Shown here one piece after another: positions 6,774 through 59,802 of a DNA stretch of 64,000 bases. This DNA comes from Sphaerodactylus townsendi (taxonomy: Eukaryota): NCBI RefSeq assembly GCF_021028975.2, contig NC_059426.1:143778001-143842000 (forward strand), read 5' to 3'. Position numbers and translations under genes: made by a program. Within the stretch, counting starts at the first letter, position 1, and every line of letters starts with the position of its first letter. Under the pieces are notes generated by a model. That model searched no databases, had not been told where the DNA came from, and saw only the letters and a list, made by a program, of their open reading frames with translations.

Positions 6774-9652
6774 AAACACGGGCATCATGTTGGGGACCCC
6801 GATGTAGAACCAGAGAGCAAAGTATACAGTCATACTTGCAAAAAAAAAAAAAGGTCAGACACATGTTCCATAAATAATAATCACCTTTTAATAGATTAAA
6901 CTCATTCACTCTATCTATTTGGGTGTACCCTTTTCGTATGAGATTTGAACCCATGCTTCTCAAGCCCTGGTTTATTTTATGTAGTTTGTTTATGATATTT
7001 ATATGTGGGAGATCTGGGTTCCAATCCCACATCAGCCTTGAAGTTTGTTGACTTGGACCAATGGAGGGAGGGAGAGGAGAGGGGAGGGGAGGGTGGCATG
7101 CGAAAGAGGGGAGGGGGCTGGCATCTGGACATGGCCCACCCAGCCTAGTGGGGAGGGGGAGGGGAGGGAGGGGGAGGGTGGCATGCAAGGAAAGGGGATG
7201 GATGGAGGGGTGGCATGCAAGGGAGGGGAGGGAGGGGTAGGAGAGCTTCAAACTCGAGCGGGAGGAAATGCCGGGCAAGGGGGAAATCCTCCCTCAGTCT
7301 AATCTTTCTCAGATGTTTTTTGTGATGATAAGATTAAGGTGGGGGGATGAGAATTTTGAAAACCATAGTAAGTTCCTTGGAGGTAGGGCAGGAGAAAATG
7401 TAACACACAGTTGTGAAGTCTTACAATCAAAGGAACTTGGAGGCCACCTATTTGCTTTCATATGCTCTGGTAAATTGGTACATTTTCCATTCTTTTACAG
7501 ATTTAGCCCCCTAACAACTCCACACTTGCATCCTTCTTCTGCATTAAAATGTTATGTTGAAATCTGTCACATTAGCACACAACTTTCCCTCCTGATCCCA
7601 GCTCTTGTCGGGCATATTTCTTAGTTGTCTCCTTGTAAACCTTCCAGTTTTCTGAGTTTGACAGTGATCTGCAGAGAGACGCTGTGAGCAAAATGATGTC
7701 ATTCAAAGCAGTTCCCTTGGAGCCGGCACTATGTTCTACATGTTGCCACATATTGGAAATCAGTCAGGACAATTTCAAGAGACTGAAGCGAAACACTTTT
7801 GCCCTTTAGACAGGCTGTTGCCTTGGTAAAACTCAAGTAACCACGTCATAGCATTCAGCCATAATTCATACAGCGTCAGCTATGAGGTATCTTCAGATTA
7901 TCAAAAGATTAGGAGAAGAAATGCACAAAGAGGAAGCAGGTGATTGCACACTAACGTTCAGAGCTGGAATCAAGGGTCAGCGTGTTTGGGCATCTGTCAG
8001 GGTCCATGGCCCAACAGAGGAAGCACCATTGACTAGATGCCTTGGCCCATCTGGTCTCATCAGATGCCCCTGCAATGTCACAAGGCCTTTGGGGACAATC
8101 TACCAGTTCCTGACCAGAGAGATACCGAGAAGCAGAAAAGTGAGGCTCTTGGGTGAATGACTACGATCCACTGCCTCCCCAAACAACTGTGACCAGAAAA
8201 TGGGAGCTAGCTGTAGAAGGACCCTATAACATCTGGGTCAATCTTCCATTTACTGGGGAGGGGGTCTTGGGAAAACTACACAGTTTGAACCTTTAAACTT
8301 CACCGGTGCCAACGAGGCTAAAAAGAGGGTGAAAGAATCTTATATTTGGCTCCTTCCAGGTTAGGAAGGACAGCCTGTCCTCTTTGGCAGGCAGTCTCCT
8401 CACCTTCTTGCTCAGTCCCCCAAGGCTGCAATGTCATCCTGTCATTCTGCAATGTCATTTTGTTTCTGGTGAATTCTACAGCATCCCGCAATGGGGTGAC
8501 ATCCAGTCACACAGTCAGAATTGATGTGGCATGATTGCAAGGACACCATTAGGATGCGACATCACAAGAGGTGCTTGGATACAGAAAAGATATCAACAGG
8601 GTGGTTAAAAGGCAATGATGCTCTTCTGTGACATCATTCACAACAGCAGTGGTAAGGCAATCTTCCTAGACTGGCAAAGCTAATTTAACACCTGCAGGGT
8701 GATAGGAACTCATAGCTGAGGTTTAATGAGATTGTGTCGAGCTTTTGGATGAATTCTAAATCAGCAGTTCCATGCTGGAATCTCTGGATAGAAAGTTCTT
8801 TTATTGAAGAACAGCCACTACCAGATCAGCAGCAAAGAGTTGTTGGATTAAATCCAAAAATAGTGGTAATATATTTTTGTTAGGGCCAGTCAAAATAGTC
8901 TAAAACAGGTCAGTGAAGGTTGCTGTCTTGCCTGTACACTGTTATCTGTGCACTCTCTGGAGGCATCTGGCTGGTCATGATTAGAAATAGGAAGCAGGAC
9001 TGGATAGACTCTTGGACTGATCTAACAGGTTTTTCCACGAGACCACATGTATTGAAGCTCCTGTTCTCTGGCAGTGCTGTCTCTAGGAAGTTTAGCACTT
9101 GGACTCCGAGTACTTTTATCAGCCCTCTCCTGCATATGTTTACTGTGAAAATCGGTTCCATGGTTCATAGTGGGGCTTATTCCAGGGAGTGTGAATAGGA
9201 TTGCAGCCTTATCTTGATGTCTAAATTATATATCAGATCCATCTATTTTTAGTCTAGAAGGTCTTCTCCAAAGTGATAATGAAGACAGACTTATGATTCT
9301 ACAGGAAGGCTATGATATCATATTATATCTCAGTTGTTAATGTTTTTTTTCTCAAACAGGTTTGCCAGCTGGATTTAAAAAAAATAGTTTTTCTGCTCCA
9401 GATAATTTGTAACTTGAAGCATTTACTCTGATTTATTGCACTTTGCTATAGGTTGGCAAAATTACTGTACTGGAATAATGTTTTGTGCTTTTTTGTAGGC
9501 TTCATATATTTTATTTTTCCCTAAATAAATCTTGTTATTGTTTAGCCACTACTGGTGCCATCTAGAAATCTTCACAGAGCAAAGTACATGTTTTTAAGGA
9601 TTCATTTACAAGGGTTTATTACAAGGGTTTTAAATTAAATACAAATAGTTCT

Positions 9653-9903
9653 GGTGGGTTTCCCGGGCTGTGGGGCCGTGGTCTGGTGGATCTTGTTCCT
9701 AACGTTTCACCTGAATCTGTGGCTGGCATCTCCAGAGGTGTGTCACAGAGGGAAGTCTGTTACCCTCTGTGATCCACCTCTGAAGATGCCAGCCACAGAT
9801 GCAGGTGAAACGTTAGGAACAAGATCCACCAGACTACGGTCACACAGCCCGGGAAACCCAGCAGAACCAGTTGAATCTGGCCGTGAAAGCCTTCGACAAT
9901 ACA
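9653..9903. mobile_element. Penelope-like element fragment as an inverted repeat, with a 17-bp flanking duplication
   Basis: About 110-bp inverted arms, terminal gaaagccttcgacaata, and TAAATACAAATAGTTCT at 9636-9652 and 9904-9920. Confidence 0.8.
9777..9817 (+). ncRNA. Minimal type I hammerhead ribozyme motif
   Basis: cct-CTGAAGA-t-gcc…ggt-GAAA-cgtt-agg. Confidence 0.6.
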
Positions 9904-9934
9904 TAAATACAAATAGTTCTTTGGTGGATAAAAC

Positions 9935-17597: not shown

Positions 17598-18825
17598 CTA
17601 TCTATTTATTTATTTATGGGATTTCTATACCACCCAATCCCCAAAGGGCTCTGGGCGGTGTACAACTATAAGAATCACTGAAATTTCATAGTAAAACCAT
17701 AGAGTTGTTGGCAGTTCCTAGAGAGCCATGACATCACTTGTGGGTTTTCTTGAACTTCATGGCATTTTTCAGAATTTTAGTTTTCTATCCCTGCTGCTCT
17801 AAGTGGCAGCAGGAAATGCCAGCCAGGGAGCTGACAACTCTACTAGCAGTATGAGGGTATCTTCAGGTGTTCAAGTCAACCTGTATAACAAAACTCTGGA
17901 AACAATTTCTTTTAGAGTCAAGCAGATCACAGTAGGGGAAAATATTTGACAGAGAAGAAACAAGGAGACGGGTTTTTAATCTTCCCTCCATCCGCCTCTT
18001 TTCCTCTTTATTTCCTCAAGTCACTTCCTCCACCTACCCTCACTGCAAGACTCCAGATACATTTTTGTGGGGCTAAACACTCATCCAGAATCCTTTGGGG
18101 AGTAGTTTTGGGAACTTTTTGGCACAAAAATAGCAAGAAAGAGAAGCATCCCTCCTCACAGTGCTCCAGTTTGGCCTGTTCTTAAACGACTTTTCCCTGG
18201 ATGAAACTGTTTTTGACAGACACATTCATCTCTAATGAGCAGTTTAGTCTTTAAGCCCATTATAAAGCAATAAAGAGAAGAAAAAGTGGCAGAAGTCAGG
18301 AGGGCTACACACTGCATCGTAGGCTATGGCTTGGGGTGGCCAAGTTTTAAAAGCACCCCAGACCCTTTTGAATGAGGTGACTATGGGAAGCACATGTAGC
18401 ACATAACTCAAGTGGTGAGTAGACAATAAGGATTTTTGCAAGATTGCAGAAGAAAACGGTGAACAACTTTGAATCATATGCCTTCATAACCATAGCACTT
18501 CCACTAAGGAGCACATCTCAGGTTCCACTGTGGTGCTGCAAAGATACTGGAAGGTTGCCAACAACCTGGAGGAGAAAATGTGTTGCCCCTTTAACAGACT
18601 TCATGGGATGTTATTTACCTGTGTGCCATGAAAAACTTCAACTGCCCATTTCCACGTGTTAAGTCTCTGCTAAAGGGGGCAACACGTTTCCTCCTCTAAG
18701 TTGTTTTCAACCCTAGATGCTGGGTCATTACTTTCAGTTCAGAGGGTGCATAATTTACCCTGGAAAGGCTGCCAGCACCAGCCCTGCCCCCAAGTTCCAG
18801 TGAACACACATACAATCCATATACA

Positions 18826-18950
18826 GGTTGTGGTGGGTTTTTCAGGCTGTGTGGCCGTGGTCTGGTAGATCTTGTTCCTAATGTTTCACCTGCATGTGTG
18901 GCTGGCATCTTCAGAGGTGTATCACAGAGAAAAAGTCTGTTACACACTGT
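18826..18950 (-). mobile_element. Penelope-like fragment with a hammerhead motif (18877-18917)
   Basis: Same family as 9653; reverse complement reads cct-CTGAAGA…GAAAcatt-agg. Confidence 0.75.
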
Positions 18951-20571
18951 GTCTAGACTGTGGAAATTTTCAGCATCCTTGCAATGCCAAAGTCATCTCT
19001 GAGGTTTTCAGCACAATCAATATCCAAATAATCTGTTGAACTGAACTGAACTGACACCCTAATTATGTAGCTATATAGTTAATGCAAATATTGTCCTCCA
19101 TAGTAATTTTCCCAATTGAAAACCCTTTATGAGGTGCTCAGGTGATTGATAAAATGTAATCATAATATAATTGTGATTTTGTTGCAATTGTACACATTAT
19201 TTTCTGCCCCTCCAAATATTCAGGGCAGTTTGCAATATAACAGGTGATATTTCCATCATAACCCACCAGTAAAGCAGCCAACGAAAATTGTCACAGCTCA
19301 ACAGATTTTTCAAAATCAGTATTGGAATCTCTATGAAATAGAAATTTTGCAAGCCTTTTGTTAAAAATGCCAGAGAGGGGATTCCAGGTGAGCATTCGAT
19401 AGGATTGGAGTGGCCCTCAAGAATGAGTAGGGCCTCACAACAAGGTATGCTGAGGTGAGATATAGGTGACCATCTTTGTTTTTCCTTTAAATGTGTCAGT
19501 TTAGGAAAACAGGGGGAATCTAAAGCTGCACATTTACTTGGGATTGAAAGCATAAAGGATTCGCAAGGACACTTACTGAAATGTCAGTTTTCGTGAGCTA
19601 GGACAAATACGATTCTTAATTGCATCTTTGTTTGAATTATCTTTGTTTTCACTACAACAGACTAACACAACCACCACAGTGGAATCTGTAACTTGGGAGT
19701 AAACCCAGTTTGGCAATTAGTCCCAATTTTTTGCAAGACAAATTACAGAGGGGATCTTACTGTTTATTATTAATGGGAGCTGTTGAATAACAGACACATA
19801 AGCATACAGCAAGAGCATCAGGGGCTGTCGTTCAGCGCATGTCATGCATACAGAAACTCCCTGGTTTATTTATTCATTCGTTTCAGCAGCAGCAGCAGTG
19901 TGAAGGGCAACAGGAATGCCTACTTATGCTACTCCCCAGAGAGGTCTGCAAAAATTGACACTAAACCATGCAACGAACAACAGTTATGAAAAGAAAACAG
20001 CCTTGTGAAATATTTTCTTCAGTTTTCAATAAGATCTTAGATGAAAAGTCAGCAACTCAGTGAGAAGCAGCCTTAAAGTTCACCACTATTCCTAATTCAC
20101 CCCAAATGTTGTGTCACGCGCACCAATTTAACCTGTTGCTCTAGTCTATGCAATCCCTTGCACACAGAACCAGCCAGACCATTCGGCAAACTTGGCAAAC
20201 AATCACTCCATGCGCCAGATTTCAAGGAGTGCCAGCATGGTGAGAGAACCCTTCTTGTCCCCATGTGCCTTTCTCCTGGAGGACAATGGGAAGCTCTGCC
20301 CACCTGCCATCTTCCTTTCCTTTGCTTCTCCTGACTCACACCCCCCCCCCCAAGTCATCTGACTCGCTGCTGTTTCCTCATCCAATAGCCTGGCTGGGAG
20401 GACGGCATGGTGTAATGCAAGGAACCTGGCAGCAGCAGCACCCAGACTATTCCCACCTCACTTCACACCCTGCAAGAGGACAACATCACAGAGCAGCAGT
20501 GTGCCACATGTCACTGCCTTATACTGAATCAGACCATTGGTCCATCAAGGCAAGTATTGTTTAATCAGACT

Positions 20572-25159: not shown

Positions 25160-25433
25160 GGGGTGCTGTGTGGTTTCCGGGCTGCATGGCCGTGTTCTAG
25201 CAGCATTCTCTCCTGATGTTTTGCCTGCATCTGTGGCTGGCATCTTCGGAGGATCTGATAGTAGGAAAGCAAGTGGAATATATATAGCTTTCCTACTATC
25301 AGATCCTCTGAAGATGCCAGTCACAGAAGCAGGCAAAACGTCAGGACAGAATGCTGCTAGAACACGGCCATGATACAGCCCGGAAACCACACAGCACCCC
25401 AGTGATTCCGGCCGTGAAAGCCTTCGACAATAT
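25160..25433. mobile_element. Penelope-like inverted-repeat fragment (second subfamily)
   Basis: About 110-bp arms (25160-25270 / 25287-25400); flanking ATTACWTATATA duplication; two mutated hammerheads. Confidence 0.82.
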
Positions 25434-30593: not shown

Positions 30594-33500
30594 TGCACCA
30601 GTCTGGCACTTAGCATCCTAAGGTAGTTAGGACCATGTGGGTGGGGCAGTGCCCAAGAGGGGTGGTCAGAAAAGCCTTATTATTGAGCCCTATGGACTGC
30701 ACCCAAATTTGTGATGGTGCATCTTTGCACTGGTACAAGAGAGAGTTCCCAGGCCAAAAAAGCGCAGGGAGTTGACTAGTGTTAGTCCTGCTCCCAGGAA
30801 TGTTCCCTTTCATGCTGAAATAGGACCCTCTGCCAAGGTTATGCTGGTGCACAAAAGTTGCGCTATAGTGCCAACATGAGAAAGAAGCATAGATGTACTG
30901 CAGTTCTGCACTGGAATAAATGGCCCTTACATGGGTGTACATGGGTGTATCCCCTATGGCTCTTTGCCAATACCCCAAAGACTGCGCTGTCAGACACGCA
31001 TCCTGAGTTACTCTGAGTTTTAAACCCTGTATCAGAAGCATGTTTCGGTTTTCAGTTATGGCTGTTGTTGATCTTAAATTTATGCTGAAGCCTTTTAAAA
31101 ACTTTTGGCAATCACAACAGTATCTTAAACACCAATACACAGAAACATACCCAAAAAGTGTGATACATTAATGTATTATCACATAAAGCAACACAGAAAC
31201 TTGAGAAATAGGCAACTGGATGTGAGGTTTTTTATAGGAAGGGTGCTGCTGTTATGGCTGTTTTAATAGTAAATTGGTTAACAATTAACTATTGATCAAT
31301 AGTTAATTGCAATAATTAGGCTTTCTACAGTCTTCTTACTGTTCATTGCACTGCTTTGTTAACTAATTTAACTAAAACTAATGATTCACATGTTTCTGTG
31401 ACTGTTTTGCAGGTAACTTGGAATCCCACTTTTAGTAGGAGGATGGGATCAAAATAACAAATATATAACCCAATATTTCATAGTTCAGAAGCCCTGCAGA
31501 TGATATAAATATTTTAATTATAATTGGCATTCAACTAAGTACATAAGGAAAGATATCAAATTTCCTTGAAGTTAAAAAAAGGATGCGCAAGTAATTCCCA
31601 AAGGGAAGTTAGTCTAGTGACCCACTTCAGATGCCCTTTATTTGCAGCAAAATTTGCAGACTTCCAGCAAAATAAAAATAGGTGTTGTCATCATGTTGTG
31701 CAGTCCTTAGGATTCAAGCAAAATTCTATAGTTTACCCATAGAGTTTGAGATGAATCCTAGAGCATCACTCAGATAGAATAATGACACTTCTAACTTTTT
31801 GCCAGAAGTGATGATGCATGCTAGCTTGTCACTGATGGAGCTGTCCCTGCTCTCAGTTCCTCCTGGAGGGTGGCTGGCAACACTAAGCAATCCTGAAGTG
31901 GATTGCTATTAAATCCTACTACAAATCATGTCTATTGAATGATGCTTAGTAGGAGAGACCACTTTATTACTCATTGAATTCCATTTTAGGGTTTTAAAAA
32001 CCTGGAAATTTTTGGAATTTTTAAAAAACCTAAACTTGAAAGTGAACAAGTAAAATTATACATATACATCCCCCTGCCTCGCTGTTTCGCAGTTTCATAT
32101 GGCTGTGGGAAACGGTGGTGGAGAAAATTTCAACTGAATGCTGGAATCCAGTCCACATGGACCTGCGAAACAGTGGCAGGGATGGAGGAGCGAGCGGTTG
32201 AACCCCAGCTGAAAAAGCTATTCTCCGACCTCCAGACTGCATAAATAGCTTGTTATTTATGCACTGAAAACATTCATTCCACTTCTTCTGGAGGAAATGG
32301 CAGCTTTGGAAGGTGGGCTTCATGACATTACACCCTACTGAGGTCCCTTCTCTCCTTAAACTCCACTCTCCCAGGCTCCACCGGTCCACCCACAAATCTG
32401 CAGGTATTTCCAAACATGGAACTGGAAACCCTAACTTCAACTGTTGTTATTCTAGGGTAGGTTCTTTACTGTAAAAGCTTCCATTCTATCAGTCATGTAT
32501 TCATTTGTTCGGGCTGCCTGCCTTCTGATAACTCCACATCGCCTACCACATCGGGCTGCTAATGTCGGCTATCAAGATAAAGCCCAAGTTATCCCCACAG
32601 CAGACTTCTTAAAATGACCTTCATTCCCGTTGTGCAAAGGAATTTAGTACCTCTTTCTCTGCCCATTTCCCTGTAAGCCAGTCCTTCTCTTCTTGTTCTT
32701 CTTTAAAAAAGAATCCAGCTAGCATTTGGCATCCCCAAATCTCTACCTCCTGTGCCTCATGTTCCTGCATTGGTTAAGAGTTGGCTCTTTGATTGTTCGC
32801 TGTTGGTTAGAAGTATTCGCATAATCAGGCCTTACATACAGGGTGCTTGTGAAAGCCATCAGTGGTTTGGGGATGCTATAGATAAATTAACTGCTCTCTT
32901 ATTCCTGAGGGTGTAGCAATAGAGAAACTTCTTGGAATAAATGTGGTGGCTTTGCAGCCCCAAAACTCTCAACAGTGTGAAGGAGCCCAAAGTGGAGAAC
33001 ATTTCTTCGTAGTAATGATCTTAGCGCTTTGTCTGTGAAATTCCAGATGTATTTTGCTGGTTGCTCTTAGCAACTGGATTAAATGAGGCCTTAGCCTGGT
33101 TTTAGCTTTTTCTGAAAGATGTATCTAAAAAGTACAGAGCCCAACTTGCCTGTCATATTCTTAGTGGTCATTGGTCACACCAAGGACTGAATCACTGAAA
33201 ACCAAAACACATGCTATGACAGAAGGCAGGCTCTTGTATATCCCCACCATATATTTTCCATAATATCTGCAAGAAACACTGTATTTTTAAAAAAAAATGT
33301 ATTTTATTGCATTTATATCCTGCCCATACCTGCCCATAGTCAGGCTCAGGGCGACTTACAGACACGTAAAAATTACATTTGAAAATATTGTAACTCTACA
33401 ATAAAACCAATAATAATACTAAAACCTGGATTATATCACTAGATGGCGAGATTATGTACTTTCCATAACGCATAAAGGAATATAACGCCACTGAAGGATA

Positions 33501-33849
33501 AATGGAAACCTGATCCAGCCCAAGTTAACAGTGTTATGCCCTTCTAAGCCAATTAACTCACATGAATTTAGAAGGGTGTAACTCCACATAGGCAGGGTAA
33601 CACTGTTACTCTTTCAGTGAAATCAGTGGGACTTCAGAAGCGCTTCAGTAGGATCATATAGCTGAAATGGGCGGGAGCAGATTCCTTAGGGTTCAAGACC
33701 CAAGAAAGGCGCTCCTTGTGAGGCAACTGTGTGGATAAAAGGAAGTATTTTGAAGAAGCAGATTCTATCCGAAATCAAAGCAGGCAATAAGCAGGGAGCC
33801 CAAGGGTAACATTCTTACACAGCTGCTCTTCCCAAGCAAGCTGGTCTTC

Positions 33850-34030
33850 AGTGATTGATCGGCAATCATTATTAATATTTTATGTCTGAGGCTGGGGCGC
33901 AGATTTGTAGCCTCGGAGCTCGACAGTGTTTCATCCTTGTTGTTTGTTTTAATTTATCTCGTTTGCAGAATGATTGTTGAGTCATTTATTATGATCATCA
34001 TGCTTCAGCAATTCATAAAATGAGCTTTGA
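33850..34030. promoter_or_regulatory. Enhancer-like non-repetitive block
   Basis: TGATTGAT, TTTATG, TGTTTGTTT, TGAGTCA and TCATAAAA clustered, with retained CpGs. Confidence 0.4.
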
Positions 34031-34255
34031 ACATGTACTTGAAATGACCAGAGCTAGAGCTATTGAACAGACCAATCAGGAAAGAAATCCGTGGGAAAAA
34101 AGGACTGAAAAATAGCCAGTACACCTAATGTAATATAAAATTATGTTTATTTATTTATATCCTGCCTTTATCCCTACTGAGGACTCAGAGCTGCTTGCAT
34201 CATTCTCCTCTCCTTTATCCTTTAAAAAACCCAACAAGGTAGGGCAGGTTGAGAG

Positions 34256-34728
34256 CAGTGGCGAAGCTACAAGGGAATGGGGGGGGGTGCGCCGTGCACC
34301 GGGTGCATGCCTGGGGAAGCAGAAAATCGCCCCCAGGCCTCTCCCCCTTTCCCTGCCCCCCTCCACAGTGCCCCCCATGGTGCCCCCCCGTGGCGCCTCC
34401 CCTTCCCCCCTTCCCACACTTACCTTTAGTTCCTTTCCTTTTTGATAACTTTTTCAGGCTGCAAAAGGCCTGTCTCAGTAAAAACAGCCTGATGAACTAA
34501 AGTTCCCAGGAGACCTTGGGGCTCTCAAGATCTCCTGGGAAGTATAGTTCCCATCAGCCCATTTTTACTTGGAAGAGGCCTTTTGCAGCCTGAAAAAGTT
34601 CGAGAAAAAGAAAAGGAACTAAGGTAAGTGTGGGAAGGGGGGAAAGGGGAGGCGCTGTGGGCGGGGCACCGCGGGGGCAGAAAATATAGTATGCGCACCA
34701 GGCGCAGTTTGGCCCAGCTATGCCTCTG
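34256..34728. mobile_element. Palindromic hAT MITE nested in an old MIR-like SINE
   Basis: TIR CAGTGGCGAAGCT…AGCTATGCCTCTG; TSD GTTGAGAG/GTTGCGAG; long internal inverted repeat. Confidence 0.85.
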
Positions 34729-35781
34729 GTTGCGAGTATGTCACCCAGCAAGCTTCCAGGGCACAGTGGAAATTCCAGCCAGATCACCCAGATTATGGCC
34801 TAGTGTTCTAAAACCACTCCAACATGCTCGATGTAACCCAGAATACATTAACAATCCAATCCAAATGAGGGAGAGTGTGGAGGCGGCTGAGAACGGTGCC
34901 ATGAATGTGGGGCTGCTCCATCTCCACAGGGACTTCAGGCAACATAGAAAGGAGTTTTTTACTAAAACCCTCCTGCCGTCTGAATTGCCCCATAGGTAAA
35001 ACAGGTTTATGTCACACAAAAGTGTGGTGTAAATCTGTGGGCCTGGAGGGTGTTGTTCCAGTTTGGAATGCTAGTGGAAGCCAACTAATGTTGGCGCCAC
35101 CCCCAGAAACACCCTGAACTGCCCACCCCACACGCTGATGTCCACTCAAATGCCAACGTAGGTCTATAGTAGCAACCGTTTCCAGGTTTGCCTACCACGA
35201 AGCTGAGGGATGGCTGAATGCTGGTGCATTTGTTCCCTCCACCGGCAGGGATCCCCCTTGTGCCAGTGGAGGGAGCTAACGTGTTAGCATGGCTTTCTGC
35301 CACTTCCTAGGGCCGTTCAGGCCCCCCATCTGGATTGGGCTGCCTGTGCATTAATATGTGCTTGTACACACACATTTACAAAAATGTGTGAATATGTAGA
35401 CAAAATCCAGAGAGATCATAGCAGGGACACAAAATTGTACAGTTTGCAAAACAGCACAGGGAAGCCCCTCCGTTTCTCTGCTAAAAAAAACGAGCAAACT
35501 GAATAGTCAGATTTAGCAGGATCCACAAAGGAGTGTCAGCCCATTTTAAGTGGTGAAGTCCATGTACTTGTTATAGAAACCGTAACTCTATGAACAGATG
35601 TCTTGTCCAACTTAGGACCTGTCACAAATGTGCCAATTCTGAGTGTTTTTGTTAAAATTAATTGAATCTAATTACAATTACATAATAAATAGTGTTATGT
35701 ATATCTGTATTTTAGTATTTGCTATTTTATGTTGATTTGTAATGCTTTACGCTTTCACAGCTGAACTACCGGTAATACAGT

Positions 35782-35829
35782 AGATTATTTATCTGTTTTA
35801 TAAAGAGATTATTTATCTGTTTTATAAAG
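35782..35829. repeat. 24-bp perfect tandem duplication
   Basis: agattatttatctgttttataaag x2. Confidence 0.9.
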
Positions 35830-35890
35830 AGATGCCCCTGAAACATGCCATTGGTCCACCAGAAACACATTTTCTTATTTCCACCCGCAC

Positions 35891-35914
35891 CTATTTGGGA
35901 TGGATTTGTTTCGT
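35891..35914 (-). CDS. Candidate 24-nt exon 2 (DETNPSQI)
   Basis: Branch-like cttaat plus ttcacctccttttcag acceptor; AG|gtgcgg donor; phase 1/1. Confidence 0.45.
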   Translation of the reverse strand, partial: TKQIHPK

Positions 35915-36899
35915 CTGAAAAGGAGGTGAAATATTAAGTATTTTACAGCAATAATTGTGAGACGAAACTAAACAGCTGTGACTGTGATGAGATGTGACTG
36001 TCAGTGTTGTCCCTCATTTTCCCTAACTCCCAGTGGAGTCATTCATAGCTGCATAACATGCAGAGATCCAACAGGCAAAAAGCCCTTTTTTCAATCATTG
36101 CATTTCCATGTCAGAAAAAGTTGCACAATTGGAGTGAGGGATTGGCTGCTTTGTAGTGATGTCACAGAATGAACTTTTGCCAAGGCTGACACATGGGGTT
36201 GGGAGGGAGAATTAGGCTTGCCAGCTCTGAGTTGGGAAATGCCTGGAGATTTGGAGGGTGGGTGGATTTCAATGGGGTATAATAATGCCGTAGAATCCAC
36301 CTTTCAAGGCAGCCATTTTCTCCAATCGAACTGCTCTCCATTGCCTGGCGATCAATCGTCATAGCAGAAGAGCTTCAGCCACCACCTGGAGGTTGACAAC
36401 TTTAGTGGAAGTGATACATTACATTCCCACAGATCCTTTCGGCAGTCAGAGCTGAGTTGATCAGACGCTGACGCATGAAGTGTTTCCCCACTAAGTATAA
36501 ACGCATCTCCCTAAAATGTACACTTTATGAATTTGAACTCAGACTCTCCAAAGCGTATGCTAAAATCAATTTGGTTAGATTTTAAGGTGCCACTGCACTC
36601 TTATATCACCGTAGTGTATGCAGGCAACGTAGATTCCCCCCCCCCTTTTATGACTCATGAGATTGTGCGGACAGCGTGGGTGTATTAGAATTATAATTGG
36701 ATCCCTGCCCAAACTGTTTGGCTCCAGCAGGGAGTCTTCGCTTGTTGGACACTGTGTACTCTAGTACAGAATTTGTAGATCTTCCCTTCCGTGGGCACTT
36801 GAGAGCCTGGAGGTGTTTTCTGCTGCAGTGCCGCCGAAGGGAGGGGCTGAGACCGAACGGGAAGATCCCTTCCCGCAGGCTGCCTACGAGTAACGTTAC

Positions 36900-36933
36900 C
36901 GAGGGGAAAGCTCTGCCTCTTCCTTCGTGACAT
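36900..36933 (-). CDS. Candidate first coding exon MSRRKRQSFPL
   Basis: gccATG in the CpG island; 34 nt to donor G|gtaacg. Confidence 0.45.
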
Positions 36934-37079
36934 GGCACAAATTGCACACGATCCCTGGGAAAGGAGCGGAAAAGCATGCCCGCAGCCTCCCGCAGGAAGC
37001 ATCCGTGCGGTCATTGCACGCAAGCCAAACGCGGGCTGGCAGGGTGGGGCGCGAGGGCGCCGCGTTGCTCCGCTCCGGT

Positions 37080-37357
37080 CTCTTAAGGGGAGGGGCTCTT
37101 CGGCGGGACTCGGTAATTTGCAGCCGATCCCTTGCCTGGGTTTGTTATGGTCCCCTTGCGTGCATTTGCAGACTAGGTGATCTGAGCTCTGAAGCTCGCG
37201 GCGGCTGCTGCAGCTGACCTGGGAAAGAGAGTCGCTGCCAACGCTTGCAAAAAGGGGTCTGGCCATGCAGCCGGGCATGTGCAGACGGTCCCTCGGTTCG
37301 TCGGTGGGGATTGCCGGCTAATGGGGCGGAAGACCAGGCGAGCGCTCAGCTGTCCAG
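37080..37357 (+). other. Candidate first exon of a plus-strand gene (start uncertain)
   Basis: CAG|gtaggg donor at 37358 inside the CpG island. Confidence 0.4.
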
Positions 37358-38479
37358 GTAGGGAACGAGCCGCCTAGTTTGCCTCCCTTGCTTCTGAGGA
37401 TAACACGTGTAGGAAGCGAGCATTGCTTTTGCATGCACGTGAGGATGGGGAGTAGCCCTCCAGGAAGGAGAGATTTGTCGGCGCGTGAACGTGGCTTAAG
37501 TAAATACCTTGCAGGCTCAGGAAGAGGGATGCGATTGAGCCGGTGGGGGTTTCCCGAAATCGGTAACTCTTCGAGCAGCCCCCGCCGTTTGGACACCTGG
37601 CGGCCAAAGATCCCCTGTAAAGGAGGGGGTGTGCATGAAAATCAAGGTGTCGCTGGGTTGGCTTCTGAGTTCACCAAGTGCAGTCTCCGAGGTCGCCTTT
37701 GCTGGCAGCCTCCGGTTAGGCCAGTTCTCGCAGAAAGGGACCGTGGAGGCTTTCTGGAAGAGTCTCGGGTACAAAAACAAAACCATGGGTCGGGGGGCGG
37801 TGCTGAAATTCCTATCCGTGCCGAGCCTATGAGGTTTCCAGAAGCACAGGGCTGTCCCCTGTTGGAAACAGGATACTGGTCCGGAGATCTTCGGGTGGGC
37901 CCAGTTAGGCCCTTATCTGTGTGCTTTCACCATTATAGAAAGCAACCCGAATGAGATGTTTGTATGCCATTTTTTTAAACAGTCCAAGTCCAGTTTATTG
38001 TTAATTAAAGCTGGAGAGGGTCACCAGGTGTGTAGTGCTTAAAATATGAGCTCTTGTGCGCTGCGGAGGTCAGGTGAAATGGTCTCCTATCATTATTTCT
38101 GAATGATACTAGATGCCATATCGATCCTTATCTTTTGGGTGCGTGTGCTGTTTGCTGACGTGGACTAAATCCAGGACTGAGACTCTGCTCCTGATTTGAA
38201 AGCCAGAGCACAGCTCAAGATTATGAAATCATAACAAGAAAAAAAAACACCTCCCACTCCTGAGTGGATTTCTTCCATAATAAGTTTCTGCTACTGGTCT
38301 TGACACATCTGGATTTAGGAGAGCAGGGTGTCTTGTCCACAAGCTAGCATCTCTCTCTTTACAAACTGAGCTCTGGAGTACTTTATGACTCAAATGGTAA
38401 TCAGCTTTTGGGATCTATTGCTATCTATTGTGATCTATTTAGTTGACTTTAAATGGGGGTTAGACCAGTTCACAGAGGA

Positions 38480-46300: not shown

Positions 46301-49300
46301 TCTATATGTGTGTGAGAGAGAGAGGGCACTGGGAAACCACAACAATAGAGCCCAATGGAGGACTTTTTGGTGGTGGAGAGGGTTTTCCTATTTTTCCCCT
46401 CCCAGCATTGTCAAGAAGCCCTCTTGGAGGTGGTCAGGAGGCGCCACAGTAGTGCTGCATCCCCCCACCAAGATGCTCTGAATTGGGCTGTGAATAAGTT
46501 AATAGAATGGGGCATCTAATAAACGTTGCAGTAGGAATGTGGAACCAACCAGAAGTCTGAAACACAGCTGAAGCAAAGCATAAAGTGCTAACATGATGCA
46601 TTAAATAATGCAGAAATTACATAAATCCTACTTACAGCAACAGTAGTATAGTCCACATTCCCTAACTGTTTCCCCAAGCATCATTACACCAGTGTTATCG
46701 CTAGTTCTGAACCCACTGCCATAAAGCACAATCCAAACGGAGTAAGTGTTATGTGCACATGACCAGTTGCCAGGAAATGGGACAGCTTGATTGACACGTT
46801 CTCCTGTTAAGATTTTCCCATTGGCTACCTTCAGGACAAGTTTCCCTTTTCCATGCCATATCATGGAGTGAATTCATTCAGATTTTTTAAGTTTTAATTT
46901 AAACATGTAAAATTCTGCAGGTTTTAGGGTTATTTGTCTGGTGCTTTTATGATCAATTTGTTCTGTCGTAGTTTTATCTTTTTAAATATTTGTTCGTTGG
47001 TTTTACTGTTAGTGCCTTGAGAACTACAGTTTGCAGAAAGTGTGGGACATAAATATTTTAAGTGTGTACTTGAGATGGCATTAATTGGTGGGGGGAAAGG
47101 GAGGGGTGACTGGGCAGACCAGATTCCATTAATTACCTTCTCACACAGTTCCATATCTAGGGGATTAATTCCACCACACCACCCCTCATTTGTAATGGAA
47201 CTGAGCCTTGAATTGCAGGATTGTGACTTTTGTAGAGGAGATATGCTGCTTTGCTTACCTGTGACTGTCTATCAATTAGACTCACCTCCTACATAGCACA
47301 CAAGTGAAGACAAGACCCACTTGAATCACTTAATGCTCCCTTTTGACTGCCTGCCTTTTCTCCCCAGAGAAAAGGTGATTATGTGTTTTGTTTGTTTCCA
47401 TGATCTGTGTGGGTGCTCTTGAGAAAATGAGGAGAGGTTTCAAGTTTGGACAGTGTTGATTGAGGTTTATGGTTGTTATCAGTGGCAGTGAAACAAATAA
47501 TCTCATGTCTGTTTGTCCCTGGGTTGATTGTTCATGGGTTGTTTAAATTTGGAGTGGCAGTTATACACCCAGATATAATTTCTTTCTGAAGAAACGCCTA
47601 TCCTGATCCTTTAAGCTAATTGTGGGAAGCAGAGGGAATATCTGTCGTGGCAGGATATCATGATTTAAGGCTGGCAACATTTAAACTGGTCCCTGTAGTT
47701 GTCCCTTTAATATCAATCTTCAGCAATTATCAGGTGATGTTAATTACCTCCATGCCATGGAAAGCTTCAACTGCCCATATTGCAGAACTTTCCTCCCCCA
47801 AAAAACTCCCCTCCCAGCCAGTTGGCAACTTTAATAGTCTCAGTCCATAATGTGGCATGTAACTGTTTTTTGTAACTCCATTGAGAAGCATGATTACTGT
47901 ATGTTATCCATTACATTTTAAATTCATACGTGGTTGTCCCTTTCTCCATTTTATTTTCACAATGATCCTGTGAGGAGGTTGGGCGGAGAATGACCAGCAC
48001 AAGTTCACCCCATGAACATAATAGCCAAATAAATATTTGAAGCTGGATGTCTTTGGCTAGTCCAATAATGTAACTACCAAACATTAGGTATTCATTGTAG
48101 ATAAAATAAGGCACATTCGAGCAATAAACATATCCTTGAAAGTAAGCTATACCTGTCTGCAGTATACACAGGAATTGTGATGTACTGAATTCTGAAATGG
48201 GCCATAGTGTGAGAATTACTAGATCTGCTGAATGGAACTAGGGACAGATGGGGGAATTTCTTTGCAAACCTGAAGAAAGTTTCAGCTTTGCGGGGGGGAA
48301 ATTCTGAAATCTAAAGGAAAAGATTGAGGGATTAAAATTTCTGAAAATATTGGTACCTGTAGCTTTCAGAAAATAATGTAAACTGAGCTCTCAGTGGCCA
48401 TTTTGAAGGTTGTTAGGTAACCACAACACCTTCTATGCCTTGGTTTCTGGAAAGCAAAGCCATGGGGCAGGTGATGGGGAGGAGGAGGAGAAAGGGTGAA
48501 CTTGAAGGCCAAAGCAGTTCTGAACCTTCAAACTAGGCTCAGCATGGTGCTAGTGGCCACTGGACTATTCAGCCAGACTTTTCCTGGGGAGAGGCTGCCA
48601 GGAAGAGGAAGGGGGGAAAACTGAAAACAAAGGAACAGATAATGGGAGGAAACAGGAAAATAGAAAGGCTATGGGGGCTGCCAGGGAAGGGAGGAAATAG
48701 TGAAGGAGGGGGACACAGGGAGAAATACTTGAGATTAATACTTTGTAAATTGTCTTACATAAAAATCTTCATTCTATGCATTTTGAGTATCTGAAACCTT
48801 ATGAGTGAAAGCATTCACTCATTCTAGGAGTGAAGCTGTTTGATAGGAGGATTCTCCCCCCCCCCCCCTCCACCCAATCCTTCCCTTGGAGGAAAAAAAT
48901 CTTGGGAGAAAACGAAAGCACACATACCCCAGATATTTTCCCCCAGGCCTTCACATTTCTACCTCTAGCAGGTGCATGTTGTAAACCTGCAGTGTAGGCA
49001 AGAACTGCCTTGCTTCATCAGAGCAAAAATCCATCCAATCTACTTATTGGGTCCTGACAGGCTATAGTAGTTTGAATCACCTTCATTCTGGGTTTGAATT
49101 AGTACTTCAAAATTTGTCTGTTGTTTGCATATAGTTTATTTAGAAATGTATTTTATGTTGATTCTTTTTAAAGGGTATCTTATTTTGAAAGATACTTGAT
49201 AAATGTGTATGCTGTCAAAATATTATTATTTTTATATAAGCAAATGAATAAGAAGAATTTCAGGAACACTCTAGAATAGATGGTTTTATCATTAAAGTTA

Positions 49301-49377
49301 ATTTGATATCCTCACCACACATGCCCTCTGCAATGGGCCATCTGCTTTTTGTAGAACCTGGCAATATCTTTTGGGCT

Positions 49378-49470
49378 TGGGTGCTGTGTGGTTTCCGGGC
49401 TGTGTGGCCGTGTTCTAGCAGCATTCTCTCCTGACGTTTCGCCTGCGTCTGTGGCTGGCATCTTCAGAGG
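49378..49470 (-). mobile_element. 93-bp Penelope-like insertion with a 12-bp TSD
   Basis: ATCTTTTGGGCT at 49366-49377 and 49471-49482; same subfamily as 25160. Confidence 0.85.
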
Positions 49471-49471
49471 A
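49429..49471 (-). ncRNA. Minimal type I hammerhead ribozyme with an intact core
   Basis: UCCU-CUGAAGA-U-GCCAGC(CACAGAC)GCAGGC-GAAA-CG-UC-AGGA. Confidence 0.7.
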
Positions 49472-49799
49472 TCTTTTGGGCTGTAAGGCAGGTGAAGTGT
49501 TCACAGTGGGCAGGATGACAGTGATCCAGGTATTTTTGTGGCTTGATGAGCTAACTGTGCCTATCCTGTAATCTACTCCTGATATGCTGGCTGTTTTAGA
49601 GAAAAAGAAATTGGGTTTCCCCCTGGAGGAAACATGTGAACGTGACCAAAATTTCTGGATTTACACAGATGTCACGAATGCAAAGGGATCCTACGCTGTT
49701 CAGGATTTAATGGAATGATAAGGACGAGCTGTATTCCCTGAGCTTGCCCTTGTTACATTGTGCGGAAGAGGCTGGAACAGAGAGTGCTGTTTGGAGCAG

Positions 49800-50009
49800 C
49801 ACGTCTGCAGCTTTCTGTGGGTCTGTTTGGGAACTGAGTTCGTTCTCTCCCTCCTCCCCCCCCCCCTTTTTTTTTTCCTGGAGGCTGTGTGGGATTGAAC
49901 TAGCTGAGTTAATGCGGACTGGGACCCAGCTGGGTTGTTTCTTTTTCTGCTTCCAAAAAAGGAAAGTCGGCAGATGCTTGCTCAACAAGCAGCCAGGTCC
50001 CCGGGCTAG
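49800..50009 (+). other. Candidate alternative first exon
   Basis: Locally CpG-enriched unique sequence ending TAG|gtgagc. Confidence 0.35.
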
Positions 50010-53000
50010 GTGAGCTGAGAGCATCTGGAAGAGCTGCAAGGATCTTTGGGGAAGTGGAATGACTGGCAAGCAGAGGTAGCTTCAAAAAGTGGTTTTAATG
50101 ACCTCTTGGCAGCCAGGGGGTCTAGGCCTTGGAAACTCAGTGGACCTTCTGTACTTTTCTCCTTAGCATTAGGCCCCTAACACTGAGCTGGGGCACTGGG
50201 TCGTAAATTGCTAATGAGAGAATCTCTTCTTGCCTGAACTAACGTCAATCCAGAAGTGTGAGAAACAGTACCAAAAAGAAACACAACTCTCCATGGGAGT
50301 TTTGGCAATCATCTCAGATGCTGCCATGCCTAGGGTAGCATGGTATCCATGTACATTTTGCTATTTTCCCAGAGCTGTTCCATTACATAGATCATCACAG
50401 GGCTGATAGTCTCTGTGTAGTTTTCCTAGATAAAATACTCTAGCTAGATTAACATGCTTGATAGGAGAAATCTAGGCAGAGGAATTTCTAGCTAAAAACA
50501 TTTCTACTGCACTTTTTTCAATCAGTGTTGGCTGAATCTGGCGGGTTTATCATGCACTTCACTGCAGGAGGCTTTGTGTGTGCGTGTGTGCGTGGTCTAC
50601 TGTGTATAAGATGAGGAAGTGGATGCAGCATACAGTCTTGGAAATGTGCCCCAGATCCTTTGATACTGGTGCATGCTTGCCTTGAGAATTACATACTACC
50701 ACAAGCAGCATTGGCTTCAAAGTCAAAAGTGATGCCACAGCATCTTCTAGCCTACGGTGTTGTTGAGAGACCTGGGATGCAACTCTCACCTGCCACTGAA
50801 CTTGTGCTGGAGCTGAGCATTTCTCAATATCCTTTGTAGCACTATAAAGAATTCTTGTGGCGAATGGTCCCTTTCCGCTTAATGTTACTGCTTCTGGCAT
50901 AAGGCCTAAAGTGCACCACAAGCTTACCTGCAAAATTGTAAATAGTCCCGCAACACACCTCTCAGATTGTGCCCTAATTACACTTGGGTATCAAAATCTG
51001 TTAGGTTTATCTTGGGTTTCAGCTCACTCTTTCTCCACAGTTAACACAGACAGAGTGCTGTACCCATGCTAGTTCCTGTATTGAGGATAGGACATAACTC
51101 AACCATGTATCAGCGACTTTGCTCATGCAAAATCCCAGGTACAATTTCTACCATTTTCAAGTAAAAGCCCCAAGTTGTAGTTGGTATGTATCCTTCCACT
51201 GGAGACTCAGAGGATTCGCTGCCAGAAACAATCACTCAGACCTCGTGAGATCAATAATCTGACTCAGCAGAAGACAGCTTCATGTAGAGTGGGGTCATGA
51301 CTTAGTGGTAAAACATTTGCTTTGCATTCAGAAGGTCCAGATGTTACCAGACAGACCTATTTGGGGGGGGGGCTGCTTTCAAAATGGTGCTCCTACTTAT
51401 CCCACCAACCTTGTAGGTAGCCTAGGAATGCAGTGCCAAGATAGAATGCCATTCTACATTGGCTCAGTGTCACCCATGAGGACAGAAAAACCTGTCCAGA
51501 CTAACCCTCGCCAACATCAGCCTTGCCTCACCTCTTCTTGCAGAGATTAGGAAAAGACAATATCTTTCAACCTACAATGCCAGTTCCCAACTCCAGCCCT
51601 GACTCACATGTCTCAATGAGACAAAGGGTATGTTAACTAAGATTTCATCAAGAGTTCCTACCAAAATACTAATCTTATCTTCTAGTTTCTGACTAACCAG
51701 TGCAACGACCACCGTCATTTACATTTGGCATTTTCCACAGTTGTTATTGAATCATCTTCACCCTAAAAAGCTATCTCCATGCATTCCCTGGCTTAGAACA
51801 TTTAGCCAAGTGACAGACCATTAACTATCGACCGCTTAACTTAAGTGTCCAACACTTAAGTGTCCAACACTTAAATTAAGTGTCCTTCTCTTGTCTTCCT
51901 TCCAGAAGGCAAGAATATCCTTTGTCCTTAGAGATTAGGGTCACTTAACATAACCTGAGGGGCCATTTCTCATTATAACTATCCCCCACGCCCAGCATTC
52001 AGTGTTCAGTATTTTCCTAGACATCTCTCTGTCTGGATAATACTGTTCCCAGCATGTTGCCTTTCTTCTTCTACTGGAGCTCAGCATGAGTCACTGAACT
52101 CTGCTCATCCGATCAGTCCTCTTCTAGATCCTGTAATTATTGCCTCATTCTCCCAAAATCCCTCGCTTTTCCAGACTTTTACTTTCAGCACTATTTATAT
52201 CCTAGAACAGTGTGAATTCTCTGCTGCTTTGATCTGTACCAGTGCGTTTCTTATTTTTACTCTTTTAATAAAAAGTGTTAAACTTTTACTCTCATTTCCT
52301 GCGGATTTCTTGCAGAATTCTATCTCTGTACACTCTGATGACAAGATCCCAAGCTTATCCGGCCCCTCACTATGTTAGGTCTGCCCTTGCTAATTCCCCC
52401 ATTCTAAAAGAAGCAGGCCACACTATTTCAGGTAACACCAGCTTCAGTGCTTGGCATCCATTTTCACGGTTTCTTCTAGTTGAGGTTCTTCTTGGCCTCA
52501 TCTACAACAAAGAATCCCAAGGCAAGCAGTAAAAAATTATGTAGAGAAAGGGAGCAGCTCTCAAAGTTCAGCATTCTTCCTCCCCATGCCTGAGTTTTTT
52601 GGGTTTAATTGAACCTCTTTCTGCTTTTGTAAAACTCACGCTGTTCTTAGAGTGGTTGCAGTCACCTGCATTGTTGCGGAAACTCAGAGTCCACTATCTT
52701 TCCCGAAGGGACTTCCTAGCTGCACATGGCTCTGCGAGTTCCTCACCCCTTCTGCATACTGCTGCAGCAGTCTAGTGATTTACATGAAGGGACCAGTCAG
52801 ATGTTTGTTGTAGCATTTCTTTTCCTGGAATTTGTGTTAATGTTGTGGTGATGTCTGTGCATCGGTTCCTTGAGCAAGAAGGGGGAAATGATAGTTCAAA
52901 AAGGAGGAGATAAAACTTGTCAGGAATTCAGGTTAGTGCAGATAAAGCAGAGGCTATTAATTAAAGTCTTCTATTGATAATCTTTGCAGGAGTCCCCCCC

Positions 53001-59577: not shown

Positions 59578-59602
59578 TGGTCTTAAACTAAAATGTAAAA
59601 TG

Positions 59603-59802
59603 TATTGTTGAAGACTTTCGCAGCCAGAATCAACTGACTGTTGTGGTTATTCCAGGCCGTGTGTCTGTGGTGTGGTAGATTTTGTTCCTAATATTTCACC
59701 TGCATCTTCAGAGGTATATCGCAGTGAGACATATCTTGTGGGATGGGAACAAAAACAACCAGAACACAATCACACAGCCTGGAAAAACAGCAGTGGCCAG
59801 TT
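59603..59802. mobile_element. Old inverted Penelope-like fragment
   Basis: Degenerate version of the 9653 structure; hammerhead stem II partly deleted. Confidence 0.6.

What the first reader, a model, noticed from the sequence alone, without database searches (positions are those of the whole stretch)
49366..49482. Intact hammerhead ribozyme delivered as a 93-bp mobile insertion
Seen: the minus strand reads UCCU CUGAAGA U GCCAGC-CACAGAC-GCAGGC GAAA CG UC AGGA. That gives stem I UCCU/AGGA, the full catalytic core, an extra U after A9, stem II, a loopless palindromic stem III (ACGU) and a GUC cleavage triplet. The insert is little more than the ribozyme and is bounded by a perfect 12-bp duplication. 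Established: Penelope-like elements and retrozymes carry minimal type I hammerheads that typically cleave as dimers. Inference: this is a non-autonomous ribozyme-bearing mini-element about 300 bp upstream of a candidate alternative promoter. It could cleave antisense transcripts if paired in trans with another copy.
Basis: partly seen in the sequence, partly recalled or inferred. Interest (0 to 1): 0.8.

Follow-up and report, generated by a model that had tools for sequence, protein, structure and literature searches.

The report
Truncated Penelope retrotransposon stub with hammerhead
The 93-base insertion is real and carries a hammerhead ribozyme motif, but it is an ordinary dead-on-arrival stub of a Poseidon-type Penelope-like retrotransposon, a layout already described in lizards, not a new ribozyme-carrying mobile element.

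Summary
A 93-bp insert (49378-49470, sense on the minus strand) lies between perfect 12-bp duplications. It carries a minimal type I hammerhead motif with C17 at 49433. A contig from a related organism lacks exactly these 105 bp, so this is a recent insertion.

The insert matches, without gaps, the last 9 nt of the pseudo-LTR plus ORF nt 1-84 of the published Anolis element Poseidon_Ac (77/93 nt, 19/28 codons). The "extra U after A9" is the middle base of the ORF's AUG. The cut site lies 26 nt after the AUG, as published. The insert's 3' end at +84 coincides with the published tail-less internal start site of reverse transcription. Its 5' end is a truncation sealed over a 4-nt microhomology.

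The hammerhead is therefore carried along because it sits next to the reverse-transcription start. It does not define the unit. Sister copies in the window have variable 5' ends and fixed 3' ends (about +84 or +119), and they form the known inverted layouts.

No Rfam hammerhead model matches. Predicted folding favours an inactive structure. No RNA data were available.

The scan has noted this family many times in this genome (143 notes). It is a known kind and of low interest.

The parts
49378..49470 (-). 93-bp insert: a 5'-truncated, tail-less stub of a Poseidon-type Penelope-like element. It comprises the last 9 nt of the pseudo-LTR plus ORF nt +1 to +84.
   Evidence: Hand count gives 77/93 nt identical to the Poseidon_Ac junction, without gaps. 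Absent from an organism C contig.
49471..49482 (.). Target-site duplication copy on the 5' side of the element (AGCCCAAAAGAT on the minus strand).
   Evidence: family D2: 12/12 identical to 49366-49377. Present once in the empty site of organism C.
49366..49377 (.). Target-site duplication copy on the 3' side of the element.
   Evidence: D2; record 17.
49471..49474 (-). AGAT: 4-nt microhomology between the target and element positions -13 to -10 at the 5' junction.
   Evidence: Sister copy B reads ...TCAGAT|CCTCTGAAG. In one search the loose ends of family contigs start only beyond 49474 and continue as B-type pLTR sequence.
49429..49471 (-). Minimal type I hammerhead motif. Helix I is UCCU/AGGA, the core is CUGAAGA, there is an extra U, helix II is GCC(A)GC/GC(A)GGC with loop CACAGAC, then GAAA and a palindromic ACGU helix III. 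C17 is at 49433.
   Evidence: It is the only descriptor hit in the window, with 0 hits in 200 random sequences.
49459..49461 (-). AUG start codon of the element's ORF, formed by A9, the 'extra' U and G10.1 of the hammerhead.
   Evidence: translation starts MPATDAGETSGEN.... [quoted passage not shown] Here 49458 to 49433 is 26 nt.
49378..49461 (-). First 28 codons of the Poseidon-type ORF (MPATDAGETSGENAARTRPHSPETTQHP). It ends in the AC-rich stretch where tail-less reverse transcription starts.
   Evidence: Poseidon_Ac MPAIDVGETSGENASGTWPHSPKDIQQP, 19/28 identical; tail spans nt 85-119.
9651..9906 (+). Sister copy A. It is a fold-back pair of stubs: a tail-less arm in inverted orientation plus a tailed arm, with a 16-bp TSD AAATACAAATAGTTCT. 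It belongs to the other subfamily.
25160..25415 (+). Sister copy B, of the same subfamily as the insert. It is a fold-back pair: the left arm ends at about +84 and the right arm carries the tail to about +117. Both hammerhead cores are mutated (G12A; also U4C in the left arm).
18823..18951 (-). Sister copy C. It is a solo tail-less stub that reaches further into the pLTR (about 38 aligned nt upstream of CCTCTGAAG). The 15.2-16.2 pair is broken.
59600..59802 (-). Sister copy D. It is an old, degraded fold-back copy with a tail and a deletion inside helix II.

Best explanation
The insert is a dead-on-arrival product of target-primed reverse transcription by a Poseidon-type Penelope-like element (PLE).

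Shown:
- It is an insertion with a 12-bp target duplication and is absent from a close relative.
- It is collinear with positions -9 to +84 of the pLTR/ORF junction of Anolis Poseidon_Ac.
- Its hammerhead overlaps the ORF start in exactly the published way.

Inferred from the published in vitro behaviour of Poseidon_Ac:
- The element's enzyme nicked the target with a 12-bp stagger.
- It started cDNA synthesis internally on the template RNA, at the upstream of the two known start sites (+84/85, giving the tail-less form).
- It copied about 93-97 nt through the uncleaved hammerhead and then stopped.
- The 5' junction was sealed over the 4-nt microhomology AGAT.

The hammerhead spans -9 to about +33, right next to the start site, so any stub longer than about 95 nt carries it. 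The ribozyme is a passenger and does not define the unit. The stub lacks ORF nt +85 to +172, the rest of the minimum template found in vitro, so it should be unable to transpose again. A single copy with a loopless helix III is not expected to self-cleave.
For: 1. Sequence, repeat and motif are as described.
2. An empty site is seen in organism C. A filled site is seen in organism B, whose contig reads 22 nt into the insert (records 17 and 9).
3. The Poseidon_Ac consensus printed ends ...CCTCTGAGG and begins ATGCCTGCCATAGATGTGGGCGAAACGTCAGGAGAGAATGC.... Against it the insert is 77/93 identical without gaps (hand count). It translates in frame to a 28-aa peptide that is 19/28 identical.
4. Frangieh et al. 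2024 (PMC11167929) report the following. The ORF begins at stem II. The cut site is 26 nt after the AUG. Reverse transcription starts at two internal sites, and the roughly 34-nt 'tail' (nt 85-119) lies between them. Both DNA strands are cleaved and extended. Uncleaved RNA is the main template.
5. In the window, tail-less arms end at about +84 (the insert, B-left, C; A-left is slightly shorter). Tailed arms end at about +117-119 (A-right, B-right, D). The 5' ends differ in every copy. Fold-back pairs have the tail at one end only, as drawn for PLEs in PMC8557442.
6. [quoted passage not shown]
7. The family is very abundant. Summed contig depth over the insert is about 10^5 times the flanks in all four organisms (a rough figure).
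Against: - No full-length Poseidon ORF was seen in this window. There were no Pfam hits in the ten longest ORFs, so the autonomous partner in this genome is inferred, not shown.
- The enzymology comes from the Anolis element, which is 83% identical over this stretch, not from this family.
- The 3' end at +84 could in principle be a coincidence for one copy, although four arms in the window share it to within a few nt.
- Ribozyme inactivity is inferred from folding energies and from published assays of related motifs. It was not measured here.
Confidence: 0.9

Rival explanations
1. A distinct non-autonomous mini-element (SINE-like or retrozyme-like) consisting essentially of the hammerhead, copied as a unit and mobilised in trans by PLE enzymes.
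For: The family is very abundant compared with any full-length element seen here. A 2026 preprint argues that animal non-LTR retrozymes derive from PLE pLTRs. The 5' end of this copy lies just at the edge of helix I.
Against: Sister copies have different 5' ends, and only the 3' ends are fixed. The insert is part of a coding sequence, in frame with the Poseidon ORF. It lacks ORF nt +85 to +172, part of the 172-nt minimum template for the enzyme in vitro. There is no tandem arrangement, whereas retrozymes are tandem repeats of about 300 bp with canonical hammerheads. No internal promoter was identified.
Confidence: 0.06
2. The stub's hammerhead is functional in the host. Paired in trans with another copy, or with abundant PLE RNA, it cleaves minus-strand transcripts after C49433 and influences a nearby promoter or transcript.
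For: The catalytic core is intact, the only intact one among the eight arms in the window. Related motifs cleave as dimers (PMC4209133; PMC6765202). The Poseidon_Ac hammerhead cleaves when its protein is added.
Against: - The insertion is absent from a close relative, so it is young and not conserved.
- Helix I has 4 bp and helix II has an A.A mismatch. The active dimer fold is 9 kcal/mol less stable than the best fold.
- Published min-HHRs have very low activity even as dimers.
- Anolis RNA-seq showed no read ends at the cut site.
- There is no CpG island or other promoter sign nearby.
- No RNA data were available here.
Confidence: 0.03
3. A chance resemblance to a hammerhead in an unrelated repeat.
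For: No Rfam hammerhead model matches, even at E<=10.
Against: The descriptor gave no hit in 200 random 64-kb sequences. The motif is homologous, position for position, to the experimentally tested Poseidon_Ac hammerhead, where C3G and G8C abolish cleavage and the double mutant partly restores it.
Confidence: 0.01

Closest known systems
Poseidon_Ac (PAc), Penelope/Poseidon-clade PLE of Anolis carolinensis (Arkhipova 2006; Frangieh et al. 2024, PMC11167929)
   Same: The pLTR/ORF junction has the same architecture. The hammerhead core lies just upstream of the AUG, which is formed by A9-U-G10.1. The cut site is 26 nt after the AUG. The N-terminal peptide is the same, MPA.D.GETSGENA..T.PHSP. An AC-rich stretch lies at about +84, where tail-less copies end. 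In sister copies the tail is of about 34 nt (...GGCCGTGAAAGCCTTCGACAA...). Fold-back pairs have the tail at one end only.
   Different: Identity over the 93 nt is 83%. The core N7 is A instead of G. Position 4 of helix II is an A.A mismatch instead of U.G, and position 5 is G-C instead of G.U. It comes from a different host (names were coded; an earlier follow-up called it a reptile genome). At least two subfamilies are present in the window.
Minimal hammerheads of metazoan PLEs (Cervera and de la Pena 2014, PMC4209133; Lunse, Weinberg and Breaker, RNA Biol 14:1499, cited in PMC6765202)
   Same: Type I topology. Helix I is short (4 bp) and helix II rather long. An unpaired nucleotide lies between A9 and G10.1. 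G10.1-C11.1 is present. Helix III has no loop and is palindromic, so it can form only between two copies. Most copies occur as dispersed single motifs from truncated PLEs, and some as pairs on opposite strands 100-700 bp apart.
   Different: Nothing essential. This copy has an internal A.A mismatch in helix II.
Animal non-LTR retrozymes (Cervera and de la Pena 2020, PMC7229834; Li et al. 2026 preprint)
   Same: They carry type I hammerheads, are thought to work as dimers, and probably derive from PLE pLTRs.
   Different: Retrozymes are tandem repeats of about 300-bp (or other) monomers with canonical hammerheads, and they give circular RNAs. Here there is a single 93-bp copy with a target duplication, no tandem repeat, a minimal hammerhead and coding sequence of the PLE ORF.
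5'-truncated LINE insertions (for example L1) with TSD and microhomology at the 5' junction. This comparison rests on my own general knowledge.
   Same: An aborted target-primed reverse transcription product, a target duplication of 12-16 bp, and a 4-nt microhomology at the 5' junction.
   Different: The 3' end is not the RNA's 3' end or a poly(A). It is an internal start site specific to PLEs, and both strands can be primed, which gives the fold-back copies.

Membership tests
Hammerhead ribozyme, minimal PLE type (min-HHR) | Conserved core C3 U4 G5 A6 N7 G8 A9 ... G12 A13 A14, A15.1-U16.1, H17 | tested here: met
   CUGAAGA ... GAAA CG U C on the minus strand, 49467-49433.
Hammerhead ribozyme, minimal PLE type (min-HHR) | [quoted passage not shown] | tested here: met
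   U at 49460. G 49459 pairs with C 49441. C15.2-G16.2 lies within ACGU.
Hammerhead ribozyme, minimal PLE type (min-HHR) | Helices I and II formed by Watson-Crick or wobble pairs | tested here: inconclusive
   Helix I has 4 bp, one of which uses the junction T. Helix II has 5 bp interrupted by an A.A mismatch. The active double-hammerhead fold is -17.9 kcal/mol against -27.2 for the MFE.
Hammerhead ribozyme, minimal PLE type (min-HHR) | Self-cleavage after H17, as a dimer or with protein help | not testable with these tools
   No RNA run was listed. Activity of the homologous Poseidon_Ac motif needed its protein.
Rfam hammerhead families (Hammerhead_1 and relatives) | Covariance-model score at or above the gathering threshold | tested here: not met
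   No hammerhead hit at gathering score or at E<=10 on 261 nt. The original study needed a dedicated relaxed descriptor for these loopless-helix-III variants.
Penelope-like element, Penelope/Poseidon clade (as a truncated copy) | Sequence homology to a PLE pLTR/ORF junction that includes the hammerhead | tested here: met
   77/93 nt and 19/28 aa identical to Poseidon_Ac, without gaps and in frame (hand count).
Penelope-like element, Penelope/Poseidon clade (as a truncated copy) | 3' ends at the two internal RT start sites (tail-less at about +84/85, tailed at about +119), with variable 5' truncation | tested here: met
   The insert ends at +84. Alignment A1 shows both end types and variable 5' ends among seven arms (for the reference positions).
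Penelope-like element, Penelope/Poseidon clade (as a truncated copy) | An RT plus GIY-YIG endonuclease ORF, showing an autonomous element in the same genome | not tested
   None in this window. Only the window and contig summaries were available. Earlier notes call the family Poseidon-type but list no full ORF.
Penelope-like element, Penelope/Poseidon clade (as a truncated copy) | Insertion with a target-site duplication and an empty site in a relative | tested here: met
   A 12-bp TSD and a precise 105-bp absence in an organism C contig (record 17).
Non-LTR retrozyme | Head-to-tail tandem repeats, each with a canonical type I hammerhead | tested here: not met
   No tandem repeat in 48800-50100. 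The insert is a single copy with a TSD and a minimal, not canonical, hammerhead.

The most novel reading that the evidence does not exclude
Because about 10^5 near-identical hammerhead-bearing stubs are scattered through the genome, a solo stub with an intact core, such as this one, could pair through its palindromic ACGU with RNA from other copies. With help from PLE protein, it could then cleave host minus-strand transcripts after C49433. Recent stub insertions would then act as polymorphic RNA-processing sites.
Probability: 0.03. Interest if true: 0.6.

Novelty: already known. Interest (0 to 1): 0.12.

Why it matters
Little new biology rests on this locus. Its value is as a clean natural example of published in vitro findings on Penelope-like elements. 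A filled and an empty allele are both seen among relatives. The 3' end sits exactly at the tail-less internal reverse-transcription start. The template was uncleaved, because the insert begins upstream of the hammerhead cut site. The 5' junction was sealed by microhomology. It also explains the 'extra U' of this hammerhead class in squamate Poseidon elements as the middle base of the ORF's AUG. For the scan, it shows that such 'intact hammerhead' calls in this genome are copies of one very abundant PLE family and need not be followed up one by one.

Tried and rejected
- Rfam at gathering score on the whole window and at E<=10 around the site gave no hammerhead family. The only weak hit was a chance match to an lncRNA model (E 0.58).
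- My first descriptor script timed out. It was rerun successfully.
- My first attempt to score the dimer used a wrong, knotted topology and gave a meaningless energy. It was corrected to the domain-swapped double hammerhead.
- I looked for a promoter or CpG island near the insert and found none. The bacterial promoter scanner was not used, because it does not apply to a vertebrate genome.
- I looked for a PLE ORF or any gene among the ten longest ORFs and found no Pfam hit.
- I looked for tandem repeats and found none.
- I searched earlier notes for a full-length Poseidon ORF in this genome and found none.
- No RNA run was listed, so read ends at the predicted cut site could not be examined.
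The identities to it are hand counts from the printed sequences.
- The large protein searches were not used. A 28-aa fragment cannot reach full-length relatives there.
The N runs at 5453-5597 and 14740-15036 were left alone.

Full report
**1. The observation**

On the minus strand, 49482-49366 reads AGCCCAAAAGAT | CCTCTGAAGATGCCAGCCACAGACGCAGGCGAAACGTCAGGAGAGAATGC...CACAGCACCCA | AGCCCAAAAGAT. The two 12-mers are identical (family D2) and enclose 93 bp (49378-49470).
- helix I UCCU/AGGA;
- core CUGAAGA;
- an extra U;
- helix II GCCAGC/GCAGGC with loop CACAGAC;
- GAAA;
- a loopless ACGU;
- C17 at 49433.

I wrote a descriptor for a minimal type I hammerhead. It asks for the core, 0-1 extra nt, G10.1-C11.1, a complementary 15.2/16.2 pair, U16.1, H17 and helix I of at least 3 bp. 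It finds this site and nothing else in the 64-kb window, and nothing in 200 random sequences with the same dinucleotide statistics. The motif is therefore not chance.

Three qualifications apply.
- Helix II contains an A.A mismatch, so the motif passes only if one mismatch is allowed.
- The fourth pair of helix I uses the T at 49471, outside the 93 bp.
- No Rfam hammerhead model matches, at gathering score or at E<=10.

**2. It is an insertion, and a recent one**

Contigs of four public runs were laid on 48600-50300.
- In organism C a 2482-nt contig covers 48601-49365 and continues without interruption at 49471-50300 (record 17, positions 1495 to 1496). It lacks exactly 105 bp, which is the insert plus one copy of the 12-mer. 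This is the empty site.
- That contig differs from the window by 41 substitutions over about 1.6 kb, plus some indels.
- In organism B a 3036-nt contig reads from the flank 22 nt into the insert (record 9), so B has the insertion.
- Organism A, probably the source of the window, has it as well. Its contigs break inside the repeat.
- Organism D was not informative.

**3. What the insert is**

The same sequence occurs elsewhere in the window:
- copy A, 9651-9906;
- copy B, 25160-25415;
- copy C, 18823-18951;
- copy D, 59600-59802.

A, B and D are fold-back structures. One arm is inverted, followed by a short spacer and then a direct arm. The direct arm continues about 33 nt further, as ...CAGTGATTCCGGCCGTGAAAGCCTTCGACAATA.

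The literature explains this layout. Penelope-like elements (PLEs) carry minimal hammerheads in their pseudo-LTRs. Most copies are dispersed single motifs from truncated elements, and some are pairs on opposite strands (Cervera and de la Pena 2014, PMC4209133). PLE insertions are heavily 5'-truncated. They often have an inverted truncated copy alongside, and a 30-40-bp 'tail' at one end only (Craig et al. 2021, PMC8557442).

Frangieh et al. 2024 (PMC11167929) studied Poseidon_Ac from Anolis carolinensis and reported the following.
- The ORF's AUG lies at the start of stem II.
- The cut site is 26 nt after the AUG.
- Reverse transcription starts at two internal sites, and the tail (about nt 85-119 of the ORF) is the stretch between them.
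- Both DNA strands are cleaved and extended.
- The uncleaved RNA is the main template.

Their File S1 prints the consensus. It ends ...CCTCTGAGG and begins ATGCCTGCCATAGATGTGGGCGAAACGTCAGGAGAGAATGC...

Against that junction the insert aligns without gaps from -9 to +84, with 77 of 93 positions identical (my hand count).
- The 84 nt after the AUG translate to MPATDAGETSGENAARTRPHSPETTQHP. Poseidon_Ac has MPAIDVGETSGENASGTWPHSPKDIQQP (19/28 identical).
- C17 at 49433 is the 26th nt after the AUG, as published.
- The insert ends at +84, exactly where the published tail begins.

**4. The family's ends**

In alignment A1 the tail-less arms stop at or within a few nt of +84. These are the insert, B-left, C and A-left. 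The tailed arms (A-right, B-right, D) stop at about +117-119.

The 5' ends differ in every arm:
- -9 to -13 in the insert;
- roughly -25 in the direct arms of A and B;
- about -38 or further in C and B-left.

Two subfamilies are present. The insert belongs with B.

The contig data agree with this picture.
- Beyond 49379 many family contigs continue into ...AATCACTG, the complement of the start of the tail, or into AT-rich flanks.
- Beyond 49474 they continue into pLTR sequence (table 7).
- B-type copies therefore match the window through AGAT (49471-49474). This stretch is a 4-nt microhomology between the target and element positions -13 to -10.

Summed contig depth over the insert is about 10^5 times that of the flanks in all four organisms. 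This is a rough figure, but it shows a very abundant family.

Only two positions of the insert differ from what at least 10% of that depth shows. At 49447 this copy has C where 93% of the depth has T, which falls in loop II. At 49441, 20% of the depth has the CpG-decay variant of C11.1. The copy is therefore close to its family consensus and keeps its CpGs, in line with a young age.

**5. Mechanism**

Shown:
- insertion with a 12-bp duplication;
- homology to the Poseidon junction;
- the 3' end at the tail-less start site;
- a template not cleaved at the hammerhead, since the insert begins upstream of the cut site.

Inferred from the Anolis enzymology:
- a staggered cut;
- internal priming at +84/85;
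- cDNA synthesis of about 93-97 nt through the hammerhead;
- early termination, followed by microhomology-mediated sealing.

The stub lacks ORF nt +85 to +172, part of the 172-nt minimum template for the enzyme in vitro, so it should be immobile.

The hammerhead spans -9 to about +33, next to the priming site, so any stub of this length carries it. It is a passenger. The fold-back sister copies fit priming on both strands.

**6. Is the ribozyme likely to work here?**

A single copy cannot form helix III. As a dimer, the double-hammerhead fold scores -17.9 kcal/mol. The best dimer fold scores -27.2, and two monomer MFEs together score -23.4. The monomer MFE pairs GAUG (A9-U-G10.1 region) with CGUC, the cleavage site. 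These energies ignore tertiary contacts and proteins.

Published min-HHRs cleave poorly even as dimers. The Poseidon_Ac motif cleaved only when its protein was added, and Anolis RNA-seq showed no read ends at the cut site. No RNA run was available for this genome, so nothing could be measured here.

Of the eight arms in the window, only this one has an intact core. The others carry G12A, U4C, A6G, a broken 15.2-16.2 pair, C11.1U or a deletion, as expected for neutral decay.

**7. Surroundings**

There is no CpG island within several kb; the only one in the window is at 37-38 kb. There is no tandem repeat, and the longest ORFs have no Pfam domain.

**8. Comparison and verdict**

The closest known thing is the published Poseidon_Ac junction and its genomic stubs. 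This locus is a truncated copy of a sister family in another reptile. It is not a retrozyme, because it is not tandem, has a minimal hammerhead and carries coding sequence. It is not a self-standing mini-element either.

The second is weak evidence for this loopless class.

The scan has already noted this family many times in this genome (143 notes). Two earlier follow-ups reached the same reading on other DNA. I formed my reading before seeing them, and I tested it here on this locus and on the window's own copies.

The finding is real but ordinary.

Noticed in passing
window 10017-10138 (-): The only Rfam hit at gathering score is 5S rRNA, at 39.5 bits against a threshold of 38, with several non-canonical pairs. 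It is followed on the same strand by sequence that looks like a SINE body (...GGCAATGGCAAACCATCTCTG...CTTGCCTTGAAAACC...). It is probably the head of a 5S-derived SINE rather than a 5S gene. PLE copy A is inserted just beside it.
   Followed up: no
window 9639-9650 versus 9865-9876: In fold-back copy A the inverted-repeat match runs 12 nt beyond the element into the left target duplication. The target AGAACTATTTGT resembles the element's AGAACCAGTTGA at the start of the tail. This may be a chance or microhomology effect at the priming site.
   Followed up: no
window 37001-38000: This is the only CpG island of the window (GC 0.575, CpG observed/expected 0.77). It lies just upstream of the minus-strand gene that another note places at 28489-36933.
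   Followed up: no
window 48828-48884: Contig depth rises about 100-fold in run X1 (8040 against about 75), which indicates another, unrelated repeat about 500 bp from the insert.
   Followed up: no
window 49398-49474 (tables 5 and 5c): Family contigs show many 'goes back' and 'opposite strands' joints with short filler letters. So head-to-tail as well as fold-back arrangements of these stubs, with varied junctions, exist elsewhere in these genomes.
   Followed up: no
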